A stretch of 64,000 bases of DNA from Bigelowiella natans CCMP2755 (GCA_000320545.1 ADNK01002144.1:26853-90852), one strand, 5' to 3'; shown: positions 1-64,000, numbered from the stretch's first letter. A program made the numbers and translations. The notes: generated by a model from the letters alone, not told the origin.

Positions 1-3000
1 AAATGAATCATGGTCGGATGAGAATATTTGACAAGATACTTGACAATTCTAGATAAATCCTTTGCTTCTTTCACCTGGGCCAAATTAAGTCAAAGGTTTA
101 TATTAAGTGCAAATCAAATGAGCATGCATGCAGTAGATTCGCAAATAACAATCAAGGCACCTTCTCGTTCACAACGATTTGGCCCTTCGCAACTTCCTAA
201 ATAACGTTAGATACTCTATGAAGAAATGTCACTTGACCATCATTTTAGCAAAATAGTTTCACGTAGTAAGAACCCATAAGTGCTTCGCCATAACGGGTCG
301 GATGGGATTATCCGTCAGACACAAGGCTTTTAACTTGCTCGATTTAATCTGTTGAAATACAATTCATCAACAATATGATTTGCAAACTTCAGCACGGAAT
401 CTACCTCTTCAATGATCGTTGTCCATACTGAATTATTCCTAATCTTGTTTGATGCTAGATTTAAGACCTAACCACAGAAAGGCTTCTATAAGACAATCTT
501 TTCCACACAACGTAAAAGAAATGCTACCTTCAGGTCGGAGCGAAATATCAAGCTCCATACGTCAATTTTTTCATTCTAAAAACCGAGTTCAAAATTCAAA
601 TCTTCTCGACAAAATAAAATTTGGTTTGAACTAACAATGCATTCCATCTAGGACAAAAACAGTATAATGTTGATATGTGCAATGTTGGATTACATCTGGA
701 ACAGAAAGCACAGGCTCCCCTTTGATTGCATTCCACGCTATTTGTAACTTCGTCAAACCCTGCACGAAGATTGCAAAGGTGATATTGGAAACTTCTGCAT
801 AAAACAGTGAACTAGAACGTCGTATGACTCACTTCGTTCTCAGCGACTCCAAGGGCAATATGCTTAAATCCTAATGATTAGGTTTCATTAAGTCGAGATG
901 AGATTGTGCTTTACTCAACCATCACCATGATCGCCTAATTGGTTCCATGAAAGATCAAGTTCTTCTAGCTTAGTGTTGACCTAAACAAGAGATACGTCCA
1001 TTAATGAATCAACTTAGTTTGATGTTGAATACGCACCCGAAGAACATCCTTAATAGCAACTGCCCCCTTAGCGGAGATACGGCACCCTCTTAGGTCGAGT
1101 GCCTTATAGACCACAAAAAAGTTAAATCATTAGGAAAGAAGAGTGTATTACACCAAATATCATCAATTACCGTTAAAGAACTATTCTCTTTCAGACCCTC
1201 CATCAGTTCAATGACGGCTAAACAAGATTTTGTCAAATAAGGTCTCATTATCGTCAAGAATTATCTACAACCCACCGAGATCTCCAATTTCGCTGTTTCC
1301 AAGTGAGAGGAACTCTAAATTCTGCGACACCTTTAATGTCATTGCAATGCTGTACCTGCATGCCATGGCTATTAGTAGGAACATCATAATGTAACATCGT
1401 AAGGAGGGCAACATACATTGAGACCACAACTTTAAGTCCCTTTGTTTCCTACTCAACCAATTATTTTTTTAGATATCATAAAGGACTGTTTAGTCAAGAA
1501 TTCCACAACCTTTTTTTGACCAGAATCTCTCGAGGCCTTTGTATTCCATAATTCGTCTATCAACCATTGCTCGCGAAGATACCTATAGGAGTTTTGCCGA
1601 TTAAAACAACCACAGTAAATAGTATCCTAGACAAGATTGAATCACAGTTTTGTACTTGATATTTTTACCATGGATCATTGTATTTGCCTCCGCTTTTAAG
1701 CTGAATCTTCCCACTTTTTCTAAATTCTTCTAGCTGTCATTATTATACAGGCATTCAGTATCTTATGGGCCAGAATCGTGGCAATCTCACCTCTGATGCT
1801 GATAAGTGGATCGCACCGCCCGAAGCAATTTTATTTTCACTAATTGACGGAAATCATATCTTTGCTTGCAAGTATTATGTGGCACGTAGTGAGAACAAAT
1901 ACAAATTTCGTAGCAGAAACAGCAACAATAATAAAGCTTCTTCCTTGTGACATACTTAAAGCTAAGTTTTGAGATGAAATCGTTGCCACGAAGCGCGTGA
2001 GCGATGACTGCACATCCTCTCTGCCTACAGGGAAAGCCCACCAGAATAACATAAAATATATATCCCCACAGTATCTAAAAGAAATGCTTGATACGTAGAG
2101 ATGATGTTTGTACCCGATTTGATTGTCCGATAAGTCGATCGCAGTTAAATTGCTATTCACCTGAAATTTAACTTTAATTTTGTGACTTCAGAAGGTTAGA
2201 GATAACTACTTTTATAGCTTCTGCCAGAGCAACTGCGTGCATATCTTCGATCCCATATCCTTCCTGAAATAAAACCCAATGTAACAATTAGGATTTCAAT
2301 GAATAATGCGGGAGTAAATGTTACCGATCTAACATAGGACATATAAGTTTACACATGTAGTGGACATATGATATCTTTTCAAAGATCTATGTAACATACC
2401 ACATTCAAGGTATCCGTTCGAAGTTGCTTCGCTATCTTAACAGATGGATACACTTGCAGCTCCCTACCAGTAGATGTCGAGATTGTAAACAAGCATCGGA
2501 TTACCATTTTTTTTTACACCCTTTCAACTTACTTGCACTTTTTGGTGTAAGCCACCTGAAAACATAAACAACATTGAGATTTCCTTTATGAGTATGGATG
2601 ACTATCAGCACCTCTCCAGATTCCATGATCTGCTTGAATTCCTTTTGATCTAAAATATTTATCCTCAAAAATCGAACTCATAATGAGGAGAGTGAATACA
2701 TACTGAAGCGTTCTTTAGTTCTGTATAAGGTAGACCTATTCTTTTCCTCCGATTCCCTGTCAAACAATCAGTTCGAAAGCATGCCGTAGACTATAAAATT
2801 AGGCGACTACCGATGCGATAATTCATCCCGCGTTTCCTATGTGTCCGAGATGTGTTTCAGATTGTATCAAATGAGCAACTCTTTTCTTTTACCGCTATCA
2901 CAGTTGCAAAATCACATTGGCCTTTTCCTTTCTCCAGCAACTCTAGCGAGAATCTACCGTGAATACAAACATCAGAGCTTCATCGTCTGTGTTTCTTTTG

Positions 3001-3056
3001 ACATACCTAACTTCGTCCTTCTTCCGAGCCTTCGCATTTTTCGGCGAACTAGACAT
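1..3056 (-). CDS. Multi-exon RNI-like (NLRC3/RanGAP-type) leucine-rich repeat protein; 3' end runs off the window
   Basis: Start MSSSPKNAKARKKDEVR at 3056 followed by a GTATGT donor. Exonic LRR units LTAIDLSDNQIG (~2113-2150), LEFLSLGNSEIGDLG (~1275-1320), TKLEELDLSWNQLGDHGG (~922-978) and LTKLQIAWNAIKGE (~715-758) are separated by ~50-70 bp GT-AG introns. Confidence 0.8.
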
Positions 3057-3360
3057 GCTCCTTGCTTGGTGCAGTTCGGACTCGGTGAACAGGCGTTTCA
3101 AAGGCGCCGCTTGTTTTTGAGAGTGGAGCTCTAGTGATGTAGGTAGGGTTAGTATGATTTTAGATGAGCAACTACTCTTCTTCTGCTACTTCTTAATCTT
3201 CCGCGGCCACCCGTTGTTCTCTTCTCACACTTTTGAGTTTTTCTTCTCTTTGAGTAGATCCAGTGAAGTTGATGAAGTCCTCGTCGTATCGGTTTCGGTT
3301 ATGTACGGTTCAGTGTGTAGTTACGACAATATTTTGTGAAAAGACTACCAGGAGAAGGTA

Positions 3361-3391
<31 letters not shown>

Positions 3392-3565
3392 CTTTTCCAT
3401 CACAATTATTGATCAGAGATATTATTGGAGCAGAGAGGGACAACTGATCATCTGTTGTTGCGGTATCAACAACAATCACTATCATCCAGTTTTAGGCCAC
3501 AAATTCTTTGCTGAACTTCAACAGTTTAGCAAAAATATTTCTGTTGAATCAGTATATAATATCTG

Positions 3566-6500
3566 ATGGAACTTGGAGAAATCCCACAACAACAACAACA
3601 ACAACAACCACAATCACGACCACAAACTCCAAAGAGAGGAGCCCACCCATTAGATCCTACTGAGTGCTTGTGCGGAGGGAGAGAGAAGCTAAACGGAATG
3701 GCGTCGATCCTTGACGATGAGATGCAAGGTAGCCATGCCAAACCTACAGAGGAGCAAGAAGCTGCATGGTTTTCCGGACTGATCTATGACCAGTTGGGTC
3801 CAAGGGAGGGCTGTTGCCTTCCCAGATTTATAGCGGAGGTTTGGAATCTTCTTCTTCAAGGCTACCTATTCACCAACTAATGAGTGTATTTTTCGTCTCA
3901 GAACAAAAGCGAATATTTGCGTGTTCGGAATACAATTTTGAAAGAGTGGTATCGCAACCCTTTCAGCTATCTCTCCCTTGAGACTGCCACGAAGGTGACA
4001 AAAATCATTAAACGCTACTTGCTCAGTTTGACAGCGTTTTACTTTTTGTATAATCTTGGTAGACATTGGGAGAAAAGGATAAGAACATTGCTCAAGCCGT
4101 TTTTGAATTCCTTAAGAACTATGGATACATCAACGCTGGGGTGTTAACCAATCAACCTGGATTCGGCCAACTCAATACTAGCAATCCACATAAGAAAAGA
4201 ATTATTGTAATCGGTGCTGGAATGAGTGGGCTAACAGCAGCGCGTCAACTTCAGGTGCTGACCTAAGAAATAACTATTCAAAAATTGTGTAGGTGTTGAT
4301 GTGGTCCTATTTTCCAGTCTTTCGGCCACGATGTTGTTGTGATAGAAGCACGAGATCGTCTCGGGGGACGCGTCAACACCGATACCAAGACATTCAATAG
4401 TCCTGTCGATATGGGCGCTTCAATCATTACAGGATTGACAGGAAACCCTATCGGTGTAGTCACGAAACAGATAGAGACTAAAGTCCATAAAATCGGGAAC
4501 AAATGCCCTCTTTTCCTTCCAGACGGCAAGGTATGAAAAGTACTGGTGCGAGCTTCTTCAATGACATGAGAAACGATATTTTCGAATGTTTTCGAATGTT
4601 ATCTGTATAGGAATTAACAGGTGAGATGGACGAACTACTCTTCGAAAAATTCAATATGTTAGAGCAACATGCACTCAAAACGGCGAAGGAATTAAGGGCT
4701 AATAATGATTCCAACCTGGACAAGATGGGCCTCTGTAAATATAAACTGATAAAAATACAATTTATCTAGCGCGAATTGTAATGGAATGCTGATTCTTCTC
4801 TGATTTATATTCAGTGGATACAATGAGAGAAGCACAGGAACATGACATGGAGGAGATAGAAAAGCAAGTGATAAATTGGCATATCACTAATCTCGAATAC
4901 GGATGCGCCACAAATCTCAAGTAATAACATTAACCCACCACCACCACCACCACCACCACCACTAGCTGCACACTTTCGCCATTATCTGCACGTGATACTC
5001 CTTGCGAATGCTATGCGCAGTAGACTACATGATTACCAAAAATGAAAGACCTGGTGCAAACAGTTGATGCAGACAAACAAGGGCAATGATGTTAATGTTG
5101 TATGCTTGATGCTGCTTCTCTCTTGTTAAACAAAGAAATCTGTCGTTGGAGCACTGGAACCAAGACGACCCGTATGGATTTCAAGGCACTCATCTCTTCT
5201 TAAAAGAGGGCTACAGCACCATCATCGAGAAGCTTGCAGAAGGCCTCAATATTAAGCTATCCCATCAAGTCCAAAGAATCAATTATATGGGTGCCAAAGG
5301 TGTCTCAGTAGAATGCAGCACAGTTAGCAAAGAAGGTCAGTGTAGTACATCAGCACACGTGTAATGTTGTTAGCGATTTTCTGAGTGAATAGAAATCGAG
5401 AAGTGCTATAGCGTCATTCTTATTTCGGGGCATTCGTTTTCACATATTGAAAATTGATATCAGGCAAAGATGGAAAAGAGTCATCAGCATCAACATCTGT
5501 TATTGAGGAAGGAGATATGGTGCTAGTCACCGTGTCCTTAGGAGTTCTAAAAAGTAAAATGATCCGATTCAGTCCCTCGCTGCCTACGTGGAAACAGATA
5601 GCTATAGATCGCCTTGGATTCGGGCTGATAAATAAACTAGTGTTGGAATGGAAAGACGAGGACATCTTTTGGTACCACATAATAGTTTCCTTTTTTCTCT
5701 TTGTGATTAAAACAATTACTGTTGTTATTCGGCGACGGTATTATTTATCGATACTTGCCATCGAGTTCATTTTTATTGATCGTTACATTACATGTGATAA
5801 TGTCCATAAAGGCGCAATGAAGACATGTTCGGCCACGTGAAAGAGGATGAAGAGCTTAGGGGAAATAATTACATGTTCTGGAATCTCAAGAATGTCAGTA
5901 GAAACAAGCACATTCTCTTATATACAACAAAATACGATTGAAATCACAGCATCATCATTAACAACACTTCTTCTTCTTCTTCTTCTTCTTCTTCCTCTCC
6001 TACCATATATCCACAGGTGACAGATAAGCCCATCCTGGTGTCCATCTTCGCTGGAGATGCGGCTGTCAAGTTGGAAGAAACGCCATTGGAGCAACTTGTT
6101 GCTGAAGCTATGACTTATCTGCGCAGGATATATGGGAGTGATACACCTGAACCTATCCGAACCTTTAAGACTGGCTGGAAGAACGACCCCTTTGCTCGAG
6201 GCACCTACTCTTACGTCGGCATTGGTGCATCTGGAAAGGACTATGACTCACTTGCCCGTCCGGTCAAGGGCCGATTGTTCTTTGCTGGTGAGGCAACTTG
6301 CAGACTCTATCCAGCTACGGTGCCTGGTGCACATGCTAGTGGGCTGTTCGCCGCAGGGCAAATAGCAGACGCTGCAAACCCTATCAAACATGACCTGTTT
6401 AAGGCCAGCACCGATTCCATTATTAAAAGCTTAGGGAAGGAAAACTTTATGAAAAATGGCATCCGGTACCGAAGGGGTGTTCGAAAATATGTTTCCCAGC

Positions 6501-7528
6501 AGCCACAAAATCATCAACATCTCTACAAGAATAAGGGGAAAGCAGATGGCAATGCATCAACGCACGCCAATTCTAATTTGGCCTCCTCCTCATCATCATT
6601 ATTATCAGCATCTTCATCATCGTTGCTATTCAAAAGAGAGATACCTTACTCCAAAAGTGACCATGGTTCTTTCGTCCTCAACCTGATGGAAGGAAACCTC
6701 GAGAATACAATACTCGGAGGAGATAACAACAAAAACGATGATAAATTAAAAGATGCTGCAGGAGGAGTCAACACAGACCGTGCCGTCACGGGTAATAGTA
6801 CGCATAAAATTTGATTCCTTATATTTAAACTGATGTATTTTATGGTAGGAGTGCAACAAGGAGAAAATGCTCTGAAAGAAAATCCCAGCTACGTATTAGA
6901 TTTGCTTAAAAAATCTTCAAGAGATATCAAACAACGGAAAAAGACCATTAAAGCTCTAGGAAAGACGACGCCGTACAAAAGTCGGAAGAGAGGTTGGTGA
7001 AATCCCTAACTTAACGATTCAGCAGTTGTTTGAAGTTTTAATTGACGGTAATCAGACGAGTTGGACGATGACGGCATTGTCGATATGACTGACATGCTGT
7101 TATCAAATAAAACGAAGAGGCGCCGCTACGAAGAACAGTCGCGTCAACGTCTAAAGAAAAAGATACAAATGAAACTCCTCAAAAAGGAAAGGAAGATGAA
7201 AAAAAGAGGCACGGAAGAAACTGGGCAAGATGCACTCAAAAAGTCGAAAAATAAGTTTGAACAAGATAAAAGCAGCACTCCGGAAGACGTTAGCTTATGT
7301 ATTCGAAATCATATCCAGAAAGTTCTTCAAAAATACGCGCAGAAATTTCACCTTCCAATGAATTTTCAAGACGAAATACTTGAAAAGTCATTTGATAAGG
7401 TGATAAAGGATTGGAACTCCAAGGAAAGGACTCGAAGCGTCAAAGTATGGATGCGAAACGAGAAACGGAAGAAAAGCCTCAAGAGTCTTGTGTCAAAATA
7501 CACTCGAAGATACGCGAAAGTCAAATAA
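3566..7528 (+). CDS. Lysine-specific histone demethylase 1-like protein (SWIRM + FAD amine oxidase, no Tower), with Lys-rich C-terminal SRI-like helical domain; about 11 exons
   Basis: SWIRM-like YLRVRNTILKEW...FEFLKNYGYINAG; FAD motif IIVIGAGMSGLTAARQL; IEARDRLGGRV, DMGASIITG, WHITNLEYGCA, GFGLINKLVL (catalytic Lys position), WKNDPFARGTYSY, LFFAGEAT..YPATVPGAHASG; canonical introns between the ORF fragments. Confidence 0.92.
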
Positions 7529-8240
7529 TCCAGCTCCTCCAATTCATCATGGCCGATTGGCAACATTAAGTACACCAGTTTGTTATTAGTTTCCCACAAC
7601 AAATGGTTTGCATCCTGCAATGCTGAATCCAGAAATACGCATGTAGATATGCTCAGCATGGATGGATTGAGCTAACTAGCTAAGCTGAAATGTAGCATCA
7701 TCGTCGTCAAAATTAGTTCCAAAACACATGAATCACGTGCAGCAAGCTAGGAACAAGGCGTCAGTGAGATTTGCATGACACTGAATGACAAATGAGTTAC
7801 ATGTGCGTGGTGCTGCCATGTTGCAATGACGATGAATGTCCATCGGCCACACATGCATCGCATGCATGTCACACAGCACACCCTAGCATGTGACACGGTG
7901 GGGAACCATGCCACACATGTCTACAGGTAGATGGGGTAGCCAAACGAATGGCATGCTAGCATGCACGAAGATCCAACGGATCGGTAGCGCGTCCCATGGC
8001 ATTTAGTTGTGCGCTGTGCTGCTTGCTGCCTGTGTGATGGACATGAAAGAGTTTTGGGTTATGACATATTGAACTTCACATTTACAAACTACATCGTACG
8101 CATGGACCGGTATCACTTTAGACACAAAATAGGCGTCTGGGTACTGTAGTTGTATAGCAAATTGTCACCATAGCATTCTAGCATTGTTGTTTTCTGCAAC
8201 CATAACCATCCTCATCATTATTTTTCTTTTTCATTATATA

Positions 8241-10040
8241 TCATGCATTTGCATCCTTAAAACCGCATTCTTCAAGATTTTTGTAGCTTTTACGCTTCAT
8301 CAATAACGCGCACTGCGCTAGTCCAGCAAGATAAGACATGGCTGCACACTGGAACTTATCAAGCGATTTTGGGGAATCATCCCAAACGCATATCGTACCC
8401 ACGCAACATTTGTTACCCTTCTCATCATCTACTTGGATAGGAACACCGGCATAGAATCGGACATTATTTCTAGTAACCATTGGGCAATCCGCGAACCGAG
8501 GATCTTTGGTTGCGTCATTCACCACAAAAATTGTGTCTGGGTAGAGAATAGTGTGGGAGCAGAAACTTATGTCACGGGGACTCTCTCGCACTTTTCCGGT
8601 ACCGATTGCCGCCTTGAAAAAGAGCTTTTCTTTTCCCACCAGATTCAACGCTCCAAAACTGGTTTTGCACAGATTAATTGCCAGGCCGACAATGTTATCA
8701 AAAACCTCTTCTGGACTTCGGTCAAGATTGAAGTTTCTCAAGCATGCCAGCCGCTCCTGCTCATTGTGTGCATATGCGGGCGGACGAAATAGAGGCTTAT
8801 TTCTCGGGTCGGGTGACTCCAAGTCAAGTTTTGGATTGCGTATAGCTAGTTTGGGCACCGGGAGTTCTTTGTGTGTTAATGCAACCCTCTTCTTAATATC
8901 TTCTCGCTTCTTCACTGACGACGAACATGAATCTGAAGATAGTGAATCCGACGACGGCCCTCCTAAATCGACTTCTCTTGTTCGATTTTGCTGTTCCTCT
9001 ACCTCGCAAGCAGAACGGATAGCTGCTGCAGCAGCCATCAGTGCTTCAACAAGCTCTGGGGTCCTCCCTAGGTCGCTTCCGCTTACGGAATCTAGGTGTG
9101 ATATCATACCAGGTATTGATAGAAGTTGACTACTGCTGCTTGTATTATGGTGACTATTATGATGTTCTTGTGAGGAGGAACTCGAGTGGTAGCAGCTTTG
9201 CATGTCCTTCCAGCTCCGTTTTTTGGAGTTATTTAACACTTTGCTGGATGCTGAAATCGCTTTCGGCCCTCTGCTAATGCTGGGTTTTCCTTCTTCAATC
9301 TCTTTGTTTTCCTCCCTTTTGTTTCTCGGGATTTTGAACTGCGGGATATTAGGGGCCAGCATGTGCGATCTGCTCCTCCTTACCACAAGTGACGGCGTTA
9401 GAAAAACCTGCACAATCGAATCGTTGATATCTTACTTTAATGAACTATATAAACATTACGAGCAGCTGAAATATGTGGGAGTTTGTAGGTTTTGTTTGAA
9501 AAGGAAGAGGATATACTTCGTGAAGTCCCGAAATGGTAAGCATACCTGTTGGGCAATCTCGATTTGTTTTGAGGTTTGGCACATCACGATTTCGGCAATT
9601 GTCTTACATTTGAAGCACATGAGACACCTTTACACAAAAATAATCACACCATAAGGTTATTTTCTTCACTGTGCTTTTGCGCTCACGTTGCTGTGTGCCT
9701 GTCTTCTCCAATCTTCCATGACACATTCCCTGCAATAACCATTCCTATTGACGCATGCTGTTAGATTAAGTTCCGTCTCGCCAAAACAAAGTTGGAAGAA
9801 CTTGGATTTTTCCAAAATTTGTCACCTTCAAAATGCTGGTGCAGTGCCGGAGATACTTCGACTAGGAAAGTTACCACTCCGAATCTCCTCAACGGCGGAG
9901 TTCCGAATCCCTCACGAACAACTCCGCGAATAAGAGTTTTCATTTTTTTTCGCGATCCATCTGATATATGCGATGCTCAATGGGCGCAGATGTACTTAGA
10001 TTGTGGAATTTATTTGTGTACCTGAGGAGGCCTGGAACAT
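8241..10040 (-). CDS. Protein with disordered Ser-rich middle and C-terminal bacterial-type GAF domain; 5' exons uncertain
   Basis: Last exon (ORF 8241-9413) has NEQERLACL, FDNIVGLA, SFCSHTI, DATKDPRFADCPMV, RFYAGVPI, GTICVWDDSP. Small upstream exons with GT-AG boundaries extend to about 10040; an alternative start near 10187 is possible. Confidence 0.8.
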
Positions 10041-21765: not shown

Positions 21766-21805
<40 letters not shown>

Positions 21806-41749: not shown

Positions 41750-41783
<34 letters not shown>

Positions 41784-41938: not shown

Positions 41939-41970
<32 letters not shown>

Positions 41971-43911: not shown

Positions 43912-43945
<34 letters not shown>

Positions 43946-46363: not shown

Positions 46364-46444
46364 TATGTGAGACGGATATAATGAAATGTTTAAATTTTTT
46401 CAATGGTCATCCTAATGTAGCTGTGCAGTGCAGCGGCTACAGCG
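46364..46444 (+). repeat. Conserved dispersed element, copy 3 (convergent spacer)
   Basis: TATGTGAGACGGATATAATGAAATGTTTAAATTTTTTCAATGGTCATCCTAATGTAGCTGTGCAGTGCAGCGGCTACAGCG. Confidence 0.85.
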
Positions 46445-46903
46445 TGTTAAGTATGTGGAAATAGATCATGACTAGAATGCTAAATCGGGCAGCTGGGCAG
46501 CTCCAGCTAGCCCACAGCCAAACGCCATAGATATATGACATGCCGCGCAGTCTTCGCTGACGTCGGACGCATAGACGGAAAAGTTTAGGTATATACAGCA
46601 GTGTAGCACAATAAGTAGAATGATGCATGATGACATGTACAGCACATGCGCTGATGCTCATATCTAGATATCTAGAGCTACACCCGCATGACTGCATGCA
46701 AATAATACAATGCCGACTAGCATGTATGAAGAAAATTTAGCTTCTTTAACTAAACTAACGACGTTACTTGCACAACAACACATGCATACACCGATAACGA
46801 GATCTAGTCTCCATCTAGCCATACTGTCATGAAAGAAGATTTCATCTTGCTTTGTTAACATCATCGAATGAACCACGATGTTGAATGTGGCACAACACTT
46901 GAA

Positions 46904-49055: not shown

Positions 49056-49092
<37 letters not shown>

Positions 49093-50650: not shown

Positions 50651-52212
50651 ATGTCGGACAACAAAATGGAGCCGCCTCGGAATGCAGCAAAGCAAGAGAA
50701 ACTAGGAGATCTCATAAACGAAATGGTCTCCGAGATGGCTTCTACATCTGCCTCCAATGGAAAGATGGAAACACCACAGGATGCCAAGGGCGACAGCTCG
50801 AATGAAAAAACAAAGGATTACCGGAAGGAGCTGCCATCTGCTTCTTTTATTAAAGCGGCGAACACAACGTTTACTAAAGTAAGATGAGATAGTACTGATG
50901 AGTTAAATGGCATTTATCCCCATCGTCATGTTTTACTGCTGTCGGACATAACAGGAGGGTGATGGGACGGGAGGCGGAAGTGTTGTTGCAAACGGCTGGA
51001 ATAACGCGATGTCACAAATCGGTTCATGGTTTAAGAAGAATGATGATTCTTCTGTTCAAGAAAGTGGGAATGGTACTAACCGCAAAGCAGCGACATCTGA
51101 GACCTCCAGCGAAGAACAATTACCACCATCTGGTCAACAATACATATGTCAAACACATATTATCCCTTCCTTTCCCCCAGCAATAATGATGAATAGCCAA
51201 TGGCTGCTTTCTTCCTTAACATGCAGGGTTGAGAAAGTCTGGCGTAGTTTATTTGAAGCCCCCCTTTAACCAGCAAAGTAACAGCTTGTTCCGAGGCCTC
51301 ATGGTATAGCGCCGACCCTAACCCCTTATTCGTTTTTATGAATCAAGTCTAATTCGTCAGTCATTCTGAATTAAGTAGTAGTATCTATTTTCTGATCGCG
51401 CTAAAATTGACCGTCGCTCATCTTTTAGGATTTGAATACCCCCCGACGATTCGTTGTAGTTACAGACCATCTTATTGAGGTTTATAGGGACCAAGGTTAA
51501 AATAAATACCTCATCCGAATTGTTACTGTGTTTTATTTATCGCATTGATGCTGATTCAAATGCTGTGTGCAGCTGAATTTCGCAAACAAGGTAAGGCAGA
51601 GAAGGCCCTTGGTCTTGACGGAATTCAAGCCAAACTTAAGGTTAATGAATGTAACGGGAGAAAAGCAGGGATGAGAAAAGAAAATGCTCAACCGTCTCAA
51701 ATCGTGAAATATCTCTTTCTTGCTTGCAGGTGATGGATGTTGGCAATGGATCTAAAGCCCACGCTTTTGAGCTTGGTAGTAAATACTCAAATTGAAGATG
51801 GGGGTGACAATGAAGAAGAGAGATAAGAGCTTGCTCATGACTGGTATCTACGTTGGTATTCAGTTTCTCGAAAGCAAAATCGTAAATGGAGCTTCTTCAC
51901 CGAAACACACCTCGAAAGTCTTGAATGGGTCACGGCGGTTATGGAGAAAAAGTAAAATACTAAAGCCTATCATTCTTCTTTTGTTTAATATACTATCCTT
52001 GAAATGGTGATGGTTGCTAGGAAGGAACATGCAGCTGCTATCGGAAAGGCCAAACATCGAAGAAAGGTCTCAATACCAGGTATCAATCCCCACCTAAGAC
52101 TGATGAAAACAATCTCAATTTAATTTTATTAAGACTAATAAGTCTAGCCGTTCTGCATGGTGCTACATTTTAGGATTATATATTAATTTCAAATCGTAGT
52201 ATATTCTACTTA

Positions 52213-52263
<51 letters not shown>

Positions 52264-55200
52264 AACAATACGTGTTATTACTTCCAAACCGTACAGAAGA
52301 ATCAAGAAAAGATCCTACATGCTCTAGCAATGTACGTGTCTATTGCTCATGTGTATGCATGTGCTGTCCTATGCGTGCAGCAGCATCTTAAGCCAATCGA
52401 CGACATGTTGTGTAAGCATGCTAGAAGTGCTCTAATTTGGAGAAGACAAGATCGTTTTCTGTTATGAGTTATACTCTTTTTTCACGGCGAGAAGGTGCTC
52501 TGACAACACTAAGCATGGAACAGATTGACGTCAGTGGTGGAGGACCATCATCAACTTGCCACAGAAAGGAAGAGGGACGCGAACATCTCAGCATGCAAGT
52601 ATTCTTGACTGATCACTACGTTGTAATCTTGAAGATGATACGATTGTTGGAGACTTGCAGTAATGTCTTCGTGTAATTATTGCGCTACAAGTACATCATC
52701 ATCATCATGATTATTTCAGGTAGCTGTACTTAAAGCGATGAGAAAAGGGCAACGTACCATCTTGAAAAACAGAGAAAATGAACTGATGATGAGGGGAAAC
52801 AAGATCTCTGAATTGGAGGATCAAGTGGCTGCTTTGGAAGCGAAAATTGAACGGTTTATTTCAAGTGATTTATTATAGATTGTCGAATCATGATGGTATG
52901 ATATTCTATTCTTTCCCTAACAAATAGATCTTTGGTGAGCACTAGAATACATATGAAAGAAGCTGATGAACAACGAAGGTAGGTCACGATGATCCGGTGT
53001 CAGTTTTTTACTGCTGCTCTATCTCCCTCTTTCCCTCTCCCCTTCACATTCGTGGTGTTGGTCAGTTGCTGTATTTTAGATAATAATCCTACTTTTACTA
53101 GAATGATAACGAGCCTGAAGAAGAAAAATGCGGAGCTCCAACGCAGATCTGTTATGGAAGCTGCTGGTGGTGGTGGTGCTGCTGCCTCTGCTACTGCTGA
53201 TCCCGCAAATAATGCAGCAAAGGCACAAAAGGATAAGGAAGATGCTATACTGAAAGCTGATCAAGAGAAAAAAGAAGCTTTGGCGAAGGCGGAGAGAGAT
53301 AAAACAGAAGCATTGCAGAAAGCTGATCAAGAGAAGAAAGAAGCTTTGACGAAGGCGGAGAGAGATAAAACAGAAGCATTGCAGAATGCAGCAACAAAAG
53401 CACAAAAGGATAGGGAAGATGCTCTGCTAAAAGCCGATCAAGAGAAGAAAGAAGCTTTGGCGAAGGCGGGGAGAGATAAAACAGAAGCATTGCAGAATGC
53501 AGCAACAAAAGCACAAAAAGATAAGAAAGATGCTCTGCTGAAAGCTGATCAAGAGAAAGAAGAAGCGTTGGCGAAGGCGGAGAAAGATAAAACAGAAGCA
53601 TTGCAGAAAGCAGCAGCAAAAGCGAATAAGGATAAGGAAGATGCTCTGCTGAAAGCTGATCAAGAGAAGAAAGAAGCTTTGGCGAAGGCGGAGAGAGATA
53701 AAACAGAAGCTTTGCAGAATGCAGCAACAAAAGCACAAAAAGATAAGAAAGATGCTCTGCTGAAAGCTGATCAAGAGAAAAAAGAAGCGTTGGCGAAGGC
53801 GGAGAGAGATAAAACAGAAGCATTGCAGAATGCAGCAGCAAAAGCGAATAAGGATAAGGAAGATGCTCTGCTGAAAGCTGATCAAGAGAAGAAAGAAGCG
53901 TTGGCAAAGGCGGAGAGAGATAAAACAGAAGCATTGCAGAATACAGCAGCAAAAGCGAATAAGGATAAGGAAGATGCTCTGCTGAAAGCTGATCAAGAGA
54001 AAAAAGAAGCGTTGGCGAAGGCGGAGAAAGATAAAACAGAAGCATTGCAGAATGCAGCAGCAAAAGCACAAAAGGATAGGGAAGATGCTTTGCGTAAAGC
54101 TGATCAAGAGAAAAAAGAAGCGTTGGCGAAGGCGGAGAGAGATAAAACAGAAGCATTGCAGAATGCAGCAGCAAACGCACAAAAAGATAAGAAAGATGCT
54201 CTGCTGAAAGCTGATCAAGAGAAAGAAGAAGCGTTGGCGAAGGCGGAGAGAGATAAAACAGAAGCATTGCAGAATGCAGCAGCAAAAGCACAAAAGGATA
54301 GGGAAGATGCTCTGCTGAAAGCTGATCAAGAGAACAAAGAAGCTTTGGCGAAGGCGGAGAGAGATAAAACAGAAGCATTGCAGAAAGCTGATCAAGAGAA
54401 GAAAGAAGCTTTGGCGAAGGCGGAGAGAGATAAAGCAGAAGCATTGCAGAATGCAGCAACAAAAGCACAAAAAGATAAGAAAGATGTTCTGCTGAAAGCT
54501 GATCAAGAGAACAAAGAAGCGTTGGCGAAGGCGGAGAAAGATAAAACAGAAGCATTGCAGAATGCAGCAGCAAAAGCGAATAAGGATAAGGAAGATGCTC
54601 TGCTGAAAGCTGATCAAGAGAAGAAAGAAGCGTTGGCAAAGGCGGAGAGAGATAAAACAGAAGCATTGCAGAATACAGCAGCAAAAGCACAAGAAGAAGC
54701 GTTGGCGAAGGCGGAGAAAGATAAAACAGAAGTATTGCAGAACGCAACAGCAAAAGCACAAAAGGATAAGGAAGACGCTCTGCTAAAAGCTGATCAAGAG
54801 AAGAAAGAAGCCTTGAAGAAGGCGGAGAGAGATAAAACAGAAGCATTGCAGAAAGCAGCAGCAAACGCACAAAAAGATAAGGAAGATGCTCTGCTGAAAG
54901 CTGATCAAGAGAAGAAAGAAGCTTTGGCGAAGGCGGAGAAAGATAAAACAGAAGCATTGCAGAAAGCTGATCAAGAGAAGAAAGAAGCTTTGGCGAAGGC
55001 GGAGAGAGATAAAACAGAAGCTTTGCAGAATGCAGCAACAAAAGCACAAAAAGATAAGAAAGATGCTCTGCTGAAAGCTGATCAAGAGAAAAAAGAAGCG
55101 TTGGCGAAGGCGGAGAGAGATAAAACAGAAGCATTGCAGAATGCAGCAGCAAAAGCGAATAAGGATAAGGAAGATGCTCTGCTGAAAGCTGATCAAGAGA

Positions 55201-57662
55201 ACAAAGAAGCGTTAGCGAGGGCGGAGAGAGATAAAACAGAAGCATTGCAGAATACAGCAGCAAAAGCGAATAAGGATAAGGAAGATGCTCTGCTGAAAGC
55301 TGATCAAGAGAAGAAAGAAGCGTTGGCGAAGGCGGAGCGAGATAAGACTGAAGCGCTACAAAAAGCAGAAGAAGGTTTGAATAAAAAGGAAGAAGCATTA
55401 CACCAAATGCTCAAGGAAAAAGAAGAAGCTATTTCATCATTACAAAAACATGTAGATCATAGTAGGAAGGTTGCTGCTGATGAAAAGCGAAGCTTAATTG
55501 AGAAGCATGAAGAGGAAATAAGTCGTCGAGAGCTGCAGCTACAATCTCTTAAAGTTACTCATGAAGAAGAAATGGAAAAATTGAAACACAGCACTGAACA
55601 GCAGAAAATGGAAAGTATAAGAGTGGAAGTGCTACGAAGAGAAGAGGAAATGAAAAATGAACTTTTGAATAAAATGAAGAAGTATAGAGAAGCTCAAGCT
55701 GCCTCGATTGCCAGTTTGAGGAGCAGCCATCAATTGCAGTTGAATAAGATCGAACAAGAATCAAAAAGAAAGCATGAAGAAGCTCTTCGTATTGCTAAAA
55801 AGGATAATAACATTGCCTTGAAACAGGCGATACAACAAGCTACTGTTTCTGAGCGTGCCCATCAAGCTGCCAGGATGAAAGTTCAAATGGAAAAAAAGGC
55901 CGCACTGTTTGATGCTAAAACTGGAGAGGCTGTTGATGCTGCTATTAAGCAAAACAAGGAGCAGCATTTCAGGGAAATTAGTGCTCTCAAATGTGAGCAT
56001 GAGCGAACAGAAGCTGAATTGCAGAAGACAAACTCCAGTCTTAGCAAAGAGTTAGCTCAGTGCAGAGCGCAATTGGAGAAAGCATCAAAGGCCAAGGCCA
56101 AGGCGAGTGAGGTGATGAAAAGTACGCGGAGTATGTGCGACACAATAGAAAACCTAAAAAAAGGTTTGGATTCGGAAAGGGAAAAGCTAAAAGTCAAGCA
56201 AATTGAGATCCGACGAAAGCATAGAGCAACTGTATCTGGACTGGAAGAGCAGCTACATGAAATGAACAATCGATTTTCTAACGAACGAAAAGCAAGAGAA
56301 AGACTCGAAAACCACGTCAACAGACTTGAAAGTATGCTGAGCATGTATAACGATAATGGAAATCGTAAGAGTGCAGCAGCAGCTACTGTACCAGCATCAT
56401 CATCACTATTATCGCTGTTTTCTTCTGCTTCTTTTACTAGTACTAATGTTCCGCCCCCCTCTTCTTCATCTTCCCAACCCCAACAAGTACTGCAGCAGAA
56501 GCAGCAGACAAAGTTGGACGCATCCCAACACAGTTCCAGTGGTAGAAGTAGCAACAACCATCTTCACTTTAAAAACACATTATGGGAGCTTGGAGAGAAG
56601 AACAGAAGTTTGCTGATTCAAAATACAAGTTTGAAGCAAAAGATTCATAAGTACTCACGCCTCATTGCAAGTCAATCCCAAAGGGAAATTGAGCGAACGG
56701 AAAGAGAGCAAAATGAAAGCAAGGGCCAACAAGATAGAGTTAGTATGCACACAAGCATGAGAGCCCCTCCACCACCTACCAAAAAGACGGGGAGGGCAAT
56801 GGATGACAGACTGGAGATGCATAAAATGTCGGCAAAATGGCGTCATGAGGAAAATCTGAAGTTACAACAGCAAATACAGGACATGGATCATCACCACGCT
56901 CTAAACGTTAGAAGTCTTAAAGACAGACACAGATCTATGTTAGAGGCAACGCGTTCAGACTACCAGATGCGAATTGAAGCTCTTGAGTCGACGGTAAAGA
57001 CACTGAGAAACGATAGCCAAAAGAAATTTGAGCGTTTGCGCGGCGAAAAGGATGCACAAGTAGCTGAGGTTAAGAAGGCTCTCTACTTGGTGGAAAAGGA
57101 TAGAGACGAGCTGTTTACTTCTTTACGTTCATTACAAGAGATGAAACGAGACATAGAAGACGACGATGAGCAATCACTGGTTAATGAGAAACCATTGAGT
57201 GATGATAGAGGGTGCAAGGTGCGAAACGAAGAAAATGAAGACGGAAAGCGTCAGAAGCAGATTGTCGACGACGCTGGCCATAATGATGATAGCGACAAAT
57301 TTGTTAGTACCGAAGCCTTTCCTCGGGTCGCGGTTACTACCTCGCAAATGTACAAACTTAAATCAAAAATCAAAACTGCGTTCAACAACTACTTACAAAA
57401 TTCTAGTTCAGCTTCATGTTATCCAGATGTCATTAAAGCAATAAAGGCAGGCCTGGAAGAGACTGGATTCCCTTCCTCAGATGCTAACTGGTTGGAAACT
57501 GCAGTTGAAAAAAAAATAGCTAACTTAGAGCAACAAAGGAATGATTCGAGATTGACGCTACGGGATCAGAAAGCGTACACCTTAAGCCAGATCAAAGGAA
57601 GCATTCAGGTATTGTTGCATGAAAGAACTTCCTTCATCGCAGAAGATAGAACTCATGATTAG
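50651..57662 (+). CDS. PH-domain protein with very long coiled coil containing a 37-aa tandem repeat
   Basis: 5' exons KSGVVYLKPP, PRRFVVVTDHLIEVYRDQ and KWSFFTETHLESLEWVTAV (PH-like). The large last exon (ORF 52989-57662) is E/K/A/Q-rich coiled coil. Confidence 0.75.
53208..55370 (+). repeat. Coding minisatellite, 111-bp / 37-aa unit with shorter 22-aa variants, about 20 copies
   Basis: KAQKDKEDALL-KADQEKKEALA-KAERDKTEALQ-NAAA repeated with high DNA identity. Confidence 0.95.
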
Positions 57663-58408
57663 GTGACACCATGCATGTAAAAGCATTCACGTTGTGTTGA
57701 ATCGGATCTTTTCAATTGTCAGATGCGATGTCTAGATGTCATCAACGCACAACTATGATCATGTCGTGCAGCATCCAGCAAGTGCCGTACGCACATCGCT
57801 AGCTAGCTAGGCATGCTAGCATGTTGCGTGCACTGAATGCTGATGTCATCTGCATCGTCACATTGTCTGTCACAGCAGTGCCCGTCGGTCTACACGTTTG
57901 CATGTTGTGACGTGTCGTGCGGCGGATTGAAATTCGCAGGAGTTGTCGCTAGCTTTGAATGCGTAAATTGCTCACTAAATTGATTCTGTAAATTTGGAAG
58001 ATGATGAATTGAAAAATAAGAGTCACACGCAGAGACGTGCTAGCGTGTGTCTCTTTTTCTAGTGTTTGACGTGCGCGCAACGGCACAAGCTTGCCGCTTT
58101 CCATGTGATCAGCTGCTGCGTCTGCTTGCATGGCTTGTCATTGTAAGCACATCTAGATCGACATGCGATCGCCATCGCCGGCGGCGCTCGCGAGCAAGAT
58201 GAGGGCAAACACACATATGCACACGACTGCTACTAGATACAGTGCATGGGACGGATGCAATGAGCAGCAATGATCAATTCTAGTATTGCATTCGTCTAGC
58301 TAGCTAGTCCGATCTAGCTAGCTATGACAATGATCATCTCGCTACTGTGTCGCAACAATGAGCTAGCTAGCTAGCTAGCTGGAAACTATAACCAACAGAT
58401 TCAACATT

Positions 58409-58541
58409 AGCGCTGTAGCCGCGAGTATAGCGCTGCATTGCACACAGCTCTAGAGCCACATGACTAGCATCAATGAGGATGACCGCATTATTGACGACGA
58501 ACAAATTTAATTTGATTTATTATACTGTTCCGTCTTACATA
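58409..58541 (-). repeat. Conserved dispersed element, copy 4, inverted and with insertions (convergent spacer)
   Basis: Reverse complement reads TATGTAAGACGGA..TATAATAAATCAAATTAAATTT...GGTCATCCTCAT...AGCTGTGTGCAATGCAGCG...CGGCTACAGCG. Confidence 0.75.
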
Positions 58542-59418
58542 TAGCTAGATAGCTGGGCAAAAGCAGCGGCCATTGCACTTAAATTATGTTATCCATCTCA
58601 TGCATAGCTAGATTCGATAGCGGCGTTCATGCGCACATTTCTAGACTTGCACCAGTCAGTAGTGCAGACATCGTAAGCATTTCAGCGTTAACGCGCAGGG
58701 GTACAACCAGAAGTTGTGTGGGATTTTAGCTAATACTGTTCAAGTTGTTTGAAGAGAAAACTTATTCACAACAAGCTGACTGCTTCAATATATTAAAACT
58801 AGATATGAAATGTCTGCTATTTTCAAATTATCTAAATCATCTGCAAAATAATTTCGTCAAGAAGCGGTTTGGGTTAAATTGTGTACATCCAGATGCATCG
58901 GGAGCCAGTGAAATGGTGGTATGGTGATAGCGATAGAGGTGCAGATTTTGATGCATCAGAAGCCAATCAAAGGGCTTTAGTATGGCATTGTGACAGAGAT
59001 AGAGGTGCAGATTTAGACGGTAAGAGTAGCACTGAACAAATGCATATCTTCGATTTTTTTCCTTTTCATAATGACGATTGAACTTTCTTGTTCTTTGTTT
59101 TGACTTTAAGCGGGGGAGGCATGAGGTGAGGTGAAAGACCCCCATGCATTCTTATGTTTTTAGCAAGAATTATGAACAAATGCTAGGGATTCCAACACCG
59201 AGGGTAGGGTTTAGTGTTTGGATTGTAATATGCTTTTAATGTTTATTTCCCTTCAAGAGGATATTGCACACAACGAGCGATGAATGAGGAGAGGCAGTGG
59301 AAGGTTTGTTGCGTTTTGGTGTAACTAGGACGTAATGGAAGCTTGCATGTGAATGAGGATGAGTAGGGATTTCTAGGTGCAGCTTGACCCCTCGTGGATC
59401 GTGAAATTTGGCTTTCAC

Positions 59419-61383
59419 TCATGCTCGTAAGAAGGATTTCATCGTATCCTCCATCGACTGCCGTGATGACTGGCAATCCATTTCAACATCGGAGCATTCA
59501 GATGGCGCCGCCTCCTCTGTTACAGACGAAGTCGATGTTTTGTCGTCCAGAATGTCTGTTTGAAGATTGATTTTATGTTGTCTTAGTAAATCTGCAGCGA
59601 CTTCACGAAAAGGGTCACTGCCCTCCCTTTCTCCAAATCGGAGAAGTCCAGGATACATGGCGTTATGCGGTCCGACGAGCTGCTTCATCCCTTCAGCATT
59701 TCTCAAGCGAGAATTCTACAGGATAAGTTCAGTTAGGCAAAAATTTTGACAATTTCATCAATTTTTTCACCATTTCGGTTTCTAGATGCCTTTCAAGCTC
59801 CGCAACATTCTTCTTAAGAAGTGCAATATAGTTCTCCCGTTCATTCAGAGAAGATTGCAGCCAGCTGGGGAGGGCAGAAATTTAGATTATAAAAGTATTT
59901 CGGATGATGCTGTGTTTACCTGATTCTCCTATCCTTATTCTTGATTTCATTCTGCAAACAATGAATTGTGTTTTTATCTGTGTTGCAAGTGCTATTCCAG
60001 GTTTTCCGTTCCTGTACAAATCGCTTCATCATTTTTTGCCTTTCATCCTGCCTAGCAGCCTGCACGATCTCCTTTACTCTAGCCTTCCAAGCTACAGAAG
60101 GTGCTTTAAGAATGTTCTCCACGCACTCTGATACAACAGCTCCGCGGGTCCTATCCAGAGGCCGACACATTTTCATCGCTTTCATCGCTTGAGTCATCCC
60201 GAACTTTCTGACAGTCGAGGTCAAACATGAGAACTTTAAGGTAATTTGGGTTCTCACCCATTTAGAGTAAAAGAAGATTGAAAAAGGGCTTGTATATGAT
60301 GATATTTATTATAACGATGATATTAAAACCAGAGAGAATATATGCAAAAAAAGTTTTCTTGGCTCAACAGATGAAAAAGTTAAAAGTTCAGCTCTGGAAT
60401 TAATGCCATCCCCATTGAATTTCATGGGAATTACTCAAAATTGTGTGCTAATTAAACTTCCTCCTTCTAGAATAGTAATATTTCGAACAATTGTCCGAGG
60501 TGGATTCCTCTCTTCGTTTGTTTTAAGGGAGGGGACAGCAACTCTTCACACCTCAGGCTGCCCCTTGAACACTGGTCACGAAAGAATAAGACCTAGCCAA
60601 CACGGTGCAACGGAGCAAATTCCAGCAAACTAAACTCCGTGAACACAAATACATCAACGGACATATGCGTTGTCGCTAAGAAAAAATGGATTGCTGCGTG
60701 TGACAATTTGACCTTTTCCATGTCCTTTTCTCCGAAATTCATTTTTGTTCTCTTTTATGAGCTTTGCGACCACCAGCGCTGCCAGTCGTTTCGAAGATGT
60801 GCAGGTAGCTTTTATCCTAAGAATTTGGAGAAAATCTCCGGAGCTCTGCCATCGTTGAAAATGAAAAGGGTTTCAGGATAAATCTCTTTCAAAATAGTCT
60901 TTTTTAGGTCTGACAATGAGCTCCTCGTGCTCGCTGAGGCTTGTTGATGTAGATTCAGTATAAATATAAAATCTTTAAAGTGCGATACATCATCTTTAAA
61001 GTAAATACGACAACCATATTATTTTTAAAATGTTTATCTATGTCCTAAATCATTGAATCTATCTGAATAATATAGTTCATCTCTTTCTGGAATAATTCTT
61101 CATATTCAACATAATTTTCTGCTCCGAGAAAGAAATATTTTACTGTATATTGCTCATATTGAAAGAAATAGAAGTGAATCCACGGAAATTTACCTCCATT
61201 CTTGTACATTTTTTTTTAATTGGACAGGAGGGTCCACTGGTGCCTCGGTTGGACACTCTGTGAAATATCCAGCTATTTTCATGGGGAATTACAGACTTTT
61301 TTGCCTTAGAAGGATTGTCGCTTGAAATTTATCATAAATCCATCCTTTGGGTGTCAACAGAGTGTGAAGACATACTGCGACAT
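59419..61383 (-). CDS. Multi-exon coiled-coil protein of unknown function; model uncertain
   Basis: Putative start MS(H)|gtatgt at 61383; exons KARVKEIVQAARQDERQKMMKRF, ERENYIALLKKNVAELERHLE and NSRLRNAEGMKQ...SFLRA*. Confidence 0.5.
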
Positions 61384-61579: not shown

Positions 61580-62988
61580 AATGATCACCAATGATTCAAT
61601 GATGACAATGGCGACTGGATGACGTCCGTGTTTGCCGAGGATTAACCCTTCGTTCGCTTGTGCATGATCACCGCGTAATGCTTCAGCATGTTACTGCATA
61701 TGAATATGAAAGCATAACCTGGTCGCGAGCAGCTTTCAAGGCCTCGAGCGTGCGGTAGCAGTACTTCGTTTTCTGTCTACGTCGTCATCGTCGTCGTCGA
61801 TCGATCGAGGATGCTAGGAAATTCTGTGGAATTGGATGGAAATGATGACCTTCTCTTCTCGGTATCAAGTGCTAATTGCAGAAAATAATAGGACGAGATA
61901 AAGATCTGTAGCAAGTGATTGTAGTTTTCTGAGCTAGGCTGGAGCGAAAGCTCCATTTGTTACTTCAACTTTCCTTGTTGGGCTTGGGTGAATGGATTCT
62001 TAATTCCCTACATGTAGTCTGATTCGGAGGTTGATCACGAACAAAGCAAGCAAGGAGGAGGAGAGTGGGAAGAGGGCAAATTGGACTTCACAGATCTCGG
62101 TACGACCCTACTACCTCCATATTCCGAATTATTACAATAGATCATCTTGAGTAGATCTTCACTATCTTTACTGTTGTTATGCAGAAGAGGTCGTTGTGCC
62201 AGACGATATTGGTGATAGTGAGAACAAAAGGTGGGATCATTCAGTGACCCAGAAGCGAGGCCTGTCCAATTTAGATCTGATATCCCTGAACAAAAAGGTG
62301 TACCACGTAGTGGTGGTGTGATAGTAGTGGTTAGGGTGGTGGTGATAAACAAAATGCAAGCAATTTATCTTTTCAACTATATGAAGGAAGGAAGGAAGGG
62401 GGGAAGGGGGGATATACTATGGATTGGGACATTTATTCTGAAAAAAACACAGGCGTCATCCTCTTCTAAAATTGTTGATGGAGAAAAAGAGCAGCGAGAC
62501 ACTGCCAAGCGCAAGGACGCTATTCTGCGAAAGCATGCTCACCGTCGTGCAACTATCGAGCAAGTATATCTTAGCCTTCAAATTCATATGGTAATGACCC
62601 TATTGAGATAATCTTGTAGTAGTACGCTTCAATACGTTCTGCATTGATAGTCATACAGGCTGTTCTCTCACGAATGAGAATCAATGCAGCTCTAAAGCAT
62701 ATGCTGAGATTTTGCGTGCAGGGAGTACATATTCTGACAGCATACTCTTTGACTAATGTGTGCCAAATACAATAGGCTCATATTCGTGTGTTGGTGGCAC
62801 GATACGCGTTCCGAAATCTTCTTTGTGAGCTTCCAAGCCTCAAGGTAGCGCCCACGTTAATCTCACTTTAATTTCACTTTGCAGCGCTGTTTTTGATAGA
62901 CGTTGTTCTCCTCAAAACAATGCAGGCGAGGATACTGTCGCAGTTCCCACCCTCCCTTATCAACAGGTGCTTCTATTTCGGAGCAACA

Positions 62989-63031
<43 letters not shown>

Positions 63032-63243: not shown

Positions 63244-63420
63244 ATAGATAGAAGTGACTTTCACCATTACTGTGACTCTATCACTGCGGTAACAACCTTG
63301 GAACGGCCGTCCTCCTACCTATTACCTTAGGTGCGCGGAAGCTAATCTTGACACAATACGGACAATAACAGCATGGTTTCACGATGCGTGGAATCTAAAG
63401 CAAACCATGCCGCTCAACTC
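61580..63420 (+). CDS. Multi-exon protein of unknown function; ends uncertain
   Basis: AG/GT-bounded open exons SDSEVDHEQSKQGGGEWEEGKLDFTDL, EEVVVPDDIGDSENKRWDH and AHIRVLVARYAFRNLLCELPSLK. Confidence 0.45.
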
Positions 63421-63573
63421 TGGACTTTCTTGTTCCCTGTGCAATACCGACGACGTCGCAAATGATGATGAGATGGAGGAGGAGGAGGAGGAGGCTATCA
63501 CTGCTCATAGAAGCATACAATCGGTCATTCCCACAACTATCTTGTTCTAACTTCCGTGACATCTACTTCTGAC

Positions 63574-63609
<36 letters not shown>

Positions 63610-63664
63610 GTGTGTGTGTGTGTGTGTGATATGCTGCTGCAGCTTTAGCAGAACTTCCGCTTAC

Positions 63665-64000
63665 CTGGGGTGTGGCGCAGCGAGGAGATCCCTGAAGAAG
63701 GCCTCGGGGCTGATGTCCTTCGCGCTGACCACGAGCACTCGATCGTCGCTGCCCCCACGATGGCCGCCGCCGGCGGCGCTTCGCCGCGGCAGAACATACT
63801 CGCCCCACGATGCCAGCTTGGTCTGCTCGGTGATGGACGATATATTCAGCAGGTCTATGGTCTCGATGACGCTGTCGCAGCTCGTCGGAGACGGAAGGCT
63901 CCCATCACCTTTGGCGTGTGGTTGGGCGCCGCCGCGACGAGAGGCTTTCGTCTCCTCCCCCGCCTCCCTCGCCTCCTCTGCCCCCTCCCCTTCCGCCCCC
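63665..64000 (-). CDS. GC-rich exon of a gene entering from the right edge
   Basis: Open frame ...DSVIETIDLLNISSITEQTKLASWGEYVLPRR...FFRDLLAAPHP ending at a GTAAGC donor near 63664. Confidence 0.5.

What the first reader, a model, noticed from the sequence alone, without database searches (positions are those of the whole stretch)
1..64000. Near-perfect strand alternation: genome built from head-to-head gene pairs
Seen, from my gene models: the order is -,+,-,+,-,+,-,+,-,+,(-),+,-,+,-,+,-,+,-. Divergent start-to-start gaps are short: 3056/3566, ~10040/10711, 20029/~20502, 28952/29316, 33529/33867, ~44299/44647, 50481/50651 and 61383/~61580. The only doubtful slot is the decayed candidate at 35.6-36.2 kb. 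Such a run is very unlikely under random orientation. Inference: modular units of one bidirectional promoter bounded by specialised termination zones.
Basis: partly seen in the sequence, partly recalled or inferred. Interest (0 to 1): 0.8.

Follow-up and report, generated by a model that had tools for sequence, protein, structure and literature searches.

The report
Alga genome of back-to-back gene pairs
In the alga Bigelowiella natans about nine in ten neighbouring genes face opposite ways, so the DNA reads as a chain of back-to-back gene pairs separated by transposon-scarred gaps, a far stronger bias than I found reported for any other eukaryote.

Summary
The window is Bigelowiella natans nuclear DNA, and the alternation is real. 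Of 16 junctions between 17 protein-coding genes, 15 switch strand. An intron-poor chlorarachniophyte-like relative shows 24 of 29, against about 62% in Ectocarpus. RNA confirms one divergent pair, with 5' ends at most about 165 nt apart. The doubtful slot at 35.4-36.1 kb is not a protein gene. It is single-copy, TpA-erased DNA weakly transcribed on the minus strand. The final '-' call is unresolved. Orthologs have different partners in the relative, which argues against co-regulated modules. The convergent spacers hold the transcript ends checked, but they carry LINE 3' tails, CTAG insertion scars and TpA hypermutation, and the relative alternates without them. Best reading: promoters are shared two-way and tandem order is selected against, while the spacers are secondary mobile-DNA sinks. 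The scan noted the same pattern in other windows of this genome. I found no paper describing it, but could not read the 2012 genome paper. The sample is 0.25% of the genome.

The parts
1..3056 (-). multi-exon leucine-rich-repeat gene; continues about 300 nt left of the window
   Evidence: gene finder; finder splits it, but there is no spacer or scar inside
3566..7528 (+). LSD1/KDM1-like SWIRM + amine oxidase gene
   Evidence: Pfam PF01593, weak PF04433; model
7610..8349 (.). convergent spacer 1 (purine-pyrimidine alternating, CTAG scars)
8241..10040 (-). GAF-domain gene (5' exons approximate)
   Evidence: PF01590
10711..16571 (+). DEAD/DEAH helicase gene
   Evidence: PF00270, PF00271
16714..17716 (.). 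convergent spacer 2; LINE 3' tail at 16921-17042
17900..20029 (-). multi-exon, probably membrane-protein gene; no Pfam hit
   Evidence: held-out strand score 6.1 vs 0; exon frames; weak
20502..26161 (+). long gene with microsatellite introns, last exon zinc-ribbon-like (25922-26161); start approximate; single gene inferred
26170..26720 (.). convergent spacer 3
26729..28952 (-). EamA/DMT transporter gene
   Evidence: PF00892
29268..32155 (+). ankyrin + EF-hand gene; ORF 29483-32058
   Evidence: transcript L011 mapped; Pfam
32155..32649 (.). convergent spacer 4; LINE 3' tail at 32268-32379
32508..33595 (-). spliced gene, four introns, ATG 33529; 3' end inside spacer 4
33596..33759 (.). divergent promoter interval, at most about 165 nt between transcript 5' ends
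33760..34985 (+). spliced gene, seven introns, ATG 33867; 3' end inside spacer 5
   Evidence: RNA
34676..35670 (.). spacer 5 at the one tandem junction; core 35.1-35.3k silent in 3 of 4 runs
35403..36090 (-). the doubtful slot: single-copy, TpA-depleted, non-coding, unspliced, weakly transcribed divergently from AMT
36209..38230 (+). ammonium transporter gene, one intron 36628-36751
   Evidence: PF00909; RNA
38198..38892 (.). convergent spacer 6
38983..44299 (-). one gene: LRR + HlyIII/PAQR membrane-domain fusion
   Evidence: homologs P0028-P0030 collinear over the whole block
44647..46100 (+). multi-exon gene with an N-terminal membrane segment; 3' end approximate
   Evidence: frame kept over three GT-AG introns (sequence); finder score weak
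46098..46728 (.). convergent spacer 7; LINE 3' tail at 46362-46453
46904..50481 (-). multi-exon gene with an HGDFN motif (APH/choline-kinase-like, from my own knowledge)
50651..57662 (+). PH-like N-terminus plus coiled coil with 111-nt tandem repeats; single gene inferred (one model split it at 52.1-52.5k)
57664..58697 (.). convergent spacer 8; degraded LINE 3' tail at 58386-58544
59419..61383 (-). multi-exon coiled-coil gene; start uncertain
   Evidence: weak
61580..63000 (+). multi-exon gene; start uncertain; may continue to the contig end
   Evidence: 22.0 vs 4.2
63661..64000 (.). GC-rich exon at the contig end, open on both strands; strand unresolved

Best explanation
SHOWN: In the 231 kb of B. 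natans examined, about 90% of gene junctions switch strand, so genes form -/+ pairs around short upstream intervals, and each pair is bounded by a 0.4-1.6 kb spacer where the checked 3' ends lie. A compact relative shows the same bias with different partners and no such spacers. The spacers are where LINE tails and CTAG insertion scars collect, and LINE copies there are TpA-hypermutated. INFERRED: one open promoter region serves two start sites back to back. Tandem order is selected against, because a promoter would fire backwards into the upstream gene's 3' end and read-through from upstream would run into the promoter. The rule concerns orientation, not partner identity, so rearrangements that keep alternation survive. 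The bias predates the spacers. Spacers grew later because convergent gaps are where insertions harm neither promoter nor splicing; they now also serve as termination buffers.
For: Held-out strand tests. 32 of 35 junctions outside the window, counting three doubtful slots as empty. 57 gene slots in 231 kb is 4.05 kb per slot, against 4.2 kb per gene from the published count (21,708 genes, mean gene 2,834 bp, PMC12730881; 91.4 Mb); 47 switches at random orientation would need about 94 genes, 2.5 kb each. RNA-verified pair at most about 165 nt apart. At the one tandem junction the AMT upstream region still gives a minus-strand RNA ending in a spacer. Relative: 24 of 29 opposite, convergent gaps median 222 nt, no scars; partners differ. 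All strong LINE-tail hits lie in spacer DNA behind gene 3' ends; 61 scars in 25 kb of spacer vs 1 in 77 kb of intron.
Against: Gene models come from a small self-trained finder, and several long blocks lack RNA proof of being one gene. The slot RNA rests on roughly a dozen reads plus unstranded contigs, and could come from the insert's own promoter. Navarrete et al. (10.1101/2025.03.17.643675) found bimodal H3K4me3 at solitary promoters only in bilaterians, which weighs against all B. natans promoters being intrinsically two-way. The one annotated Amorphochlora locus read +,+,-,+. No shared promoter motif was found. Selection against tandem order was not measured.
Confidence: 0.6

Rival explanations
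1. Each -/+ pair is a chromatin or topological domain, and the spacers are dedicated terminator or boundary elements that enforce the alternation, as convergent sites do in dinoflagellates and kinetoplastids.
For: Every convergent junction examined and the one tandem junction has spacer-class DNA; transcript 3' ends lie in it; the tested core is silent. CTAG-rich DNA also follows gene ends in Amorphochlora.
Against: Spacer content is largely mobile-element debris. Only about half of the spacers carry the shared repeat. The relative alternates with short plain gaps.
Confidence: 0.17
2. Neutral inheritance: alternation arose in a compact ancestor and persists because breakpoints fall mainly in repeat-rich convergent spacers, where rearrangements keep the -/+ symmetry.
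For: LINE tails in spacers offer recombination substrates (525 exact copies of a 17-mer); breaks confined to convergent gaps preserve alternation by geometry.
Against: Partners have been swapped between lineages, which needs breaks in divergent intervals; mixing both kinds of break makes tandems, which are rare.
Confidence: 0.1
3. Pairs are co-regulated functional modules driven by one bidirectional promoter.
For: Short upstream intervals (169-670 nt between ATGs).
Against: Partners are functionally unrelated (EamA with ANK/EF-hand, GAF with helicase, UNC-93 with thiolase) and not conserved. In Ectocarpus divergent partners share chromatin yet correlate at only 0.04-0.05 (10.1101/2020.03.09.980763).
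Confidence: 0.08
4. Artefact or local fluke: merged or missed genes hide many tandem pairs, or the two contigs are unrepresentative.
For: Self-made gene models; small sample; three unresolved slots on C778.
Against: Gene-density bound, homolog proof for one suspect block, RNA for three genes, and the same bias in another species with independent gene calls.
Confidence: 0.05

Closest known systems
Ectocarpus and other brown algae, opposite-strand neighbour bias (10.1101/2020.03.09.980763; 10.1101/2024.02.19.579948)
   Same: Excess of opposite-strand neighbours; short divergent gaps; partners probably not co-regulated.
   Different: About 62% there against about 91% here (p 1e-4 for 32/35 at 0.62); no transposon-scarred spacer class described in the passages read.
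Chromera and Vitrella head-to-head clustering (PMC4501334)
   Same: Algal genomes with more head-to-head pairs than chance.
   Different: Stated only for genes under 1 kb apart, without a figure; not described as near-total alternation.
Mammalian bidirectional gene pairs (PMC2077898)
   Same: Start sites under 1 kb apart on opposite strands.
   Different: About 10% of genes; here nearly all genes, and partners are not conserved.
Kinetoplastid and dinoflagellate strand-switch architecture (mostly own knowledge; base J termination, 10.1101/753004 abstract)
   Same: Transcription ends at convergent junctions with special DNA.
   Different: Those genomes have long same-strand arrays; this is the mirror case, one gene per direction.
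TpA-to-TpG/CpA hypermutation of foreign DNA in B. natans (10.64898/2026.01.13.699255)
   Same: Explains the TpA loss of the slot and of LINE copies, and part of spacer composition.
   Different: That paper treats viral inserts and TpA-poor windows; the parts I read do not treat gene orientation or convergent spacers.

Membership tests
Bidirectional (head-to-head) gene pairs | Adjacent genes on opposite strands with start sites under 1 kb apart | tested here: met
   RNA 5' ends at most about 165 nt apart for one pair; ATG gaps 169-670 nt for seven window pairs
Bidirectional (head-to-head) gene pairs | One shared nucleosome-depleted region or promoter drives both genes | not testable with these tools
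   Needs CAGE, ATAC, ChIP or reporter data; no shared motif found by k-mer count
Co-regulated conserved bidirectional modules | Same partners kept across species | tested here: not met
   UNC-93, thiolase and ANK/EF-hand orthologs have different partners in the relative; three genes only
Co-regulated conserved bidirectional modules | Correlated expression of partners | not testable with these tools
   Contig depths are not a usable measure of expression
Ectocarpus-type alternation bias | Opposite-strand neighbours significantly above 50%, short divergent gaps | tested here: met
   47 of 51 in B. natans, 24 of 29 in the relative
Kinetoplastid/dinoflagellate strand-switch regions | Long unidirectional gene arrays between switches | tested here: not met
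   One gene per direction
Kinetoplastid/dinoflagellate strand-switch regions | Modified base or domain boundary at convergent sites | not testable with these tools
   Needs modification calling or Micro-C
Non-LTR retrotransposon (spacer repeat) | RT domain and C-terminal CCHC knuckle ending at the repeat; copies share the 3' end and differ in 5' extent | tested here: met
   YCDD motif, CCHC and stop next to the repeat; RVT_1 only weak, E 0.0056; 1.0-1.56 kb copies 92-99% identical
Non-LTR retrotransposon (spacer repeat) | Endonuclease domain and target-site duplications | not tested
   No full-length copy was held
B. natans TpA hypermutation | TpA loss with TpG/CpA gain | tested here: met
   Slot TpA O/E 0.20; 38 of 42 TpA of one LINE copy are TpG/CpA in another

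The most novel reading that the evidence does not exclude
Chlorarachniophyte nuclear genomes are built almost wholly of two-gene units with obligately two-way promoters. Each unit is a small chromatin domain closed by a convergent zone that ends transcription and draws in mobile elements: the mirror image of dinoflagellate and kinetoplastid same-strand arrays.
Probability: 0.25. Interest if true: 0.8.

Novelty: new variant of a known kind. Interest (0 to 1): 0.6.

Why it matters
Why gene orientation departs from random in eukaryotes is an open question, and the cases I found are modest (about 10% head-to-head in humans, about 62% opposite-strand in Ectocarpus). A 91-Mb intron-rich genome at about 90%, with partners reshuffled between relatives, separates 'orientation rule' from 'co-regulation'. 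It can be tested at once with existing annotation, RNA-seq and ChIP data. It also gives a strong prior for annotating these genomes, since an apparent tandem pair often marks a missed small gene or a split model, and it shows where mobile DNA is tolerated.

Tried and rejected
A minus-strand ORF at 25895-26227 that looked like a signal peptide was rejected as the shadow of the plus-strand zinc-ribbon-like exon. The idea that 38.9-44.3k is two tandem genes was rejected. No tRNA or Rfam family lies in the window. No shared promoter k-mer was found. CpG-deamination decay as the source of spacer composition was rejected because CpG O/E there is 0.94. Pfam was blank for most short exons and the Atlas search was uninformative. 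Spliced models were searched exon by exon, by reference; joined models were used only inside local scripts and not sent to any search tool. Ten literature searches found no description of this architecture in B. natans; Curtis et al. 2012 was not held, so prior mention there is not excluded.

Full report
Source. The window is G000:C1593:26853-90852 of a 91,405,885-base assembly in 3,736 contigs. The contig count matches Bigelowiella natans (Table 1 of PMC12730881). A window protein is 100% identical to an MMETSP/JGI transcript product, and its nearest named relative is from Norrisiella. It is an intron-rich eukaryote, so ORF lists alone do not give genes.

Method. I wrote a two-strand gene finder with no preference for alternation and self-trained it on the window, the 27 kb to its left and 140 kb of contig C778. 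For strand tests I used models trained without the region under test. More genome could not be fetched. Joined models stayed inside scripts; searches were made exon by exon.

Observation. Pfam, homologs or RNA fix nine of them independently. The order is -,+,-,+,-,+,-,+,-,+,+,-,+,-,+,-,+, so 15 of 16 junctions switch (p 2.6e-4, post hoc). The last exon (63.66-64.0k) is open on both strands and unresolved. The block 38.9-44.3k looked like two genes, but three homologs align in order across it as one LRR + HlyIII/PAQR protein.

Beyond the window. The six genes to the left continue the alternation. On C778, 30 of 33 slots are clear and three are doubtful. Counting those three as empty gives 32 of 35 opposite-strand junctions outside the window (91%, CI 77-98%, p 2e-7; p 1e-4 against the Ectocarpus level). 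A LINE fragment inside a C778 spacer was not counted as a gene. A check that does not depend on how models are split: 57 slots in 231 kb is 4.05 kb per slot, close to the 4.2 kb per gene implied by the published count. Random orientation would need about 94 genes of 2.5 kb to give 47 switches, shorter than the published mean gene of 2,834 bp. The sample remains 0.25% of the genome, from two long contigs. Other first readers of this scan noted the same in other windows of this genome; these are unchecked leads, not support.

RNA (window 32301-38300). The minus gene has four CT..AC introns and ends near 32510. The plus gene has seven GT..AG introns and ends near 34985. AMT has one intron and ends near 38100-38230. 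In the raw-read run, reads pile at 3' ends and lie on each flanking gene's sense strand. By that key, the doubtful slot carries a weak minus-strand, unspliced RNA over about 35.4-36.1k, also seen as contigs in three other runs. The slot has one match in the genome, no coding signal and a TpA O/E of 0.20. That is the signature of the TpA-to-TpG/CpA hypermutation of foreign DNA reported for this species (10.64898/2026.01.13.699255). So this junction is tandem for proteins but still alternates for transcripts. The spacer core at 35.1-35.3k is silent in three of four runs.

Spacers. All eight window spacers alternate purines and pyrimidines and are rich in TGCA, CATG, AGCT and CTAG. About half of 28 spacers share a repeat of about 110 nt, one 17-mer of which has 525 exact copies in the genome and none in the reversed control. 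Longer copies show it to be the 3' end of a non-LTR retrotransposon, with an RT motif, a CCHC knuckle and a stop just before the repeat. All strong hits lie in spacer DNA behind gene 3' ends. One copy has lost 38 of the 42 TpA that another keeps. Following a lead from s1-417327, I counted four letters repeated around CTAG: 61 in 25 kb of spacer, 1 in 77 kb of intron, 3 in 83 kb of exon; 29 of 30 window cases lie in or at the edge of spacers. The spacers are therefore heavily shaped by mobile DNA, while also holding transcript ends.

Relatives. The ANK/EF-hand ortholog led to a 66-kb metagenome contig of an intron-poor, 59% GC eukaryote whose UNC-93 protein groups with chlorarachniophytes at 100/100. 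Over 53 kb, 24 of 29 junctions switch strand (p 2.7e-4), using the collection's own gene calls with three probable split or spurious calls merged or dropped. Convergent gaps have a median of 222 nt and no scars. UNC-93, thiolase and ANK/EF-hand lie on one contig in both organisms. In B. natans UNC-93 pairs with thiolase and ANK/EF-hand with an EamA gene; in the relative they pair with a kinase, an EamA gene and a GBP gene. Orientation is kept while partners change. One annotated Amorphochlora locus reads +,+,-,+, with a 3.6-kb gap that may hide a gene; it is too small to judge.

Mechanism. The pairing, short upstream intervals, spacer content and partner swapping are shown. The cause is inferred: shared two-way promoter regions plus selection against tandem order through transcriptional interference, with spacers arising later as insertion-tolerant termination buffers (0.6). 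Rivals are dedicated boundary elements (0.17), breakpoint bias (0.1), co-regulated modules (0.08) and artefact (0.05). One published point weighs against intrinsic two-way firing: bimodal H3K4me3 at solitary promoters was found only in bilaterians, in a study that included B. natans.

Known cases and verdict. Opposite-strand bias is known in brown algae (about 62%, partners uncorrelated), chromerids and mammals (about 10% of genes). I found no report of it in B. natans in ten searches or in the passages I searched in two rhizarian genome papers, but could not read Curtis et al. 2012. It is an extreme variant of a known kind, real in the sample and quick to test genome-wide. Interest 0.6.

Noticed in passing
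window spacers; C778 and C1593 spacers: Four identical letters on both sides of CTAG occur 2.4 times per kb in spacers and almost never in introns; this looks like an insertion or excision footprint of an unidentified element.
   Followed up: partly
L023:5153-6700 (C778:115153-116700), L002-L004: A young LINE family (92-99% identical copies) with very uneven TpA loss between copies (O/E 0.03 in one).
   Followed up: partly
L020:8050-8500 (C778:88050-88500): An element of about 450 nt with terminal inverted repeats (MITE-like) in a doubtful gene slot.
   Followed up: no
L013:3900-4400 (C778:13.9-14.4k): A TpA-depleted insert (O/E 0.21) inside a divergent interval, similar in make-up to the window's 35.4-36.2k slot.
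   Followed up: partly
window:38983-44299: LRR + HlyIII/PAQR fusion protein, conserved as a fusion in several other protist sequences.
   Followed up: partly
window:53207-55483: About 19-20 copies of a 111-nt (37 aa) coding repeat in a coiled-coil protein.
   Followed up: no
window:20103-20261: A 69-nt tandem duplication (2.3 copies, 97%) inside a divergent promoter interval.
   Followed up: no
L029, L035, L037, L041, L043 (ENA KOPF15-1 scaffold_547): A compact, nearly intron-free, 59% GC chlorarachniophyte-like genome in metagenomes, partly syntenic with B. natans C1593.
   Followed up: partly
L039:6414-7500 and 20000-22000: CTAG-rich DNA directly at and behind gene 3' ends in Amorphochlora too.
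   Followed up: partly
window:32268-32379: RNA reads from other loci pile on the LINE tail on both strands in a 3'-biased library, so the tail may lie in many 3' UTRs.
   Followed up: no
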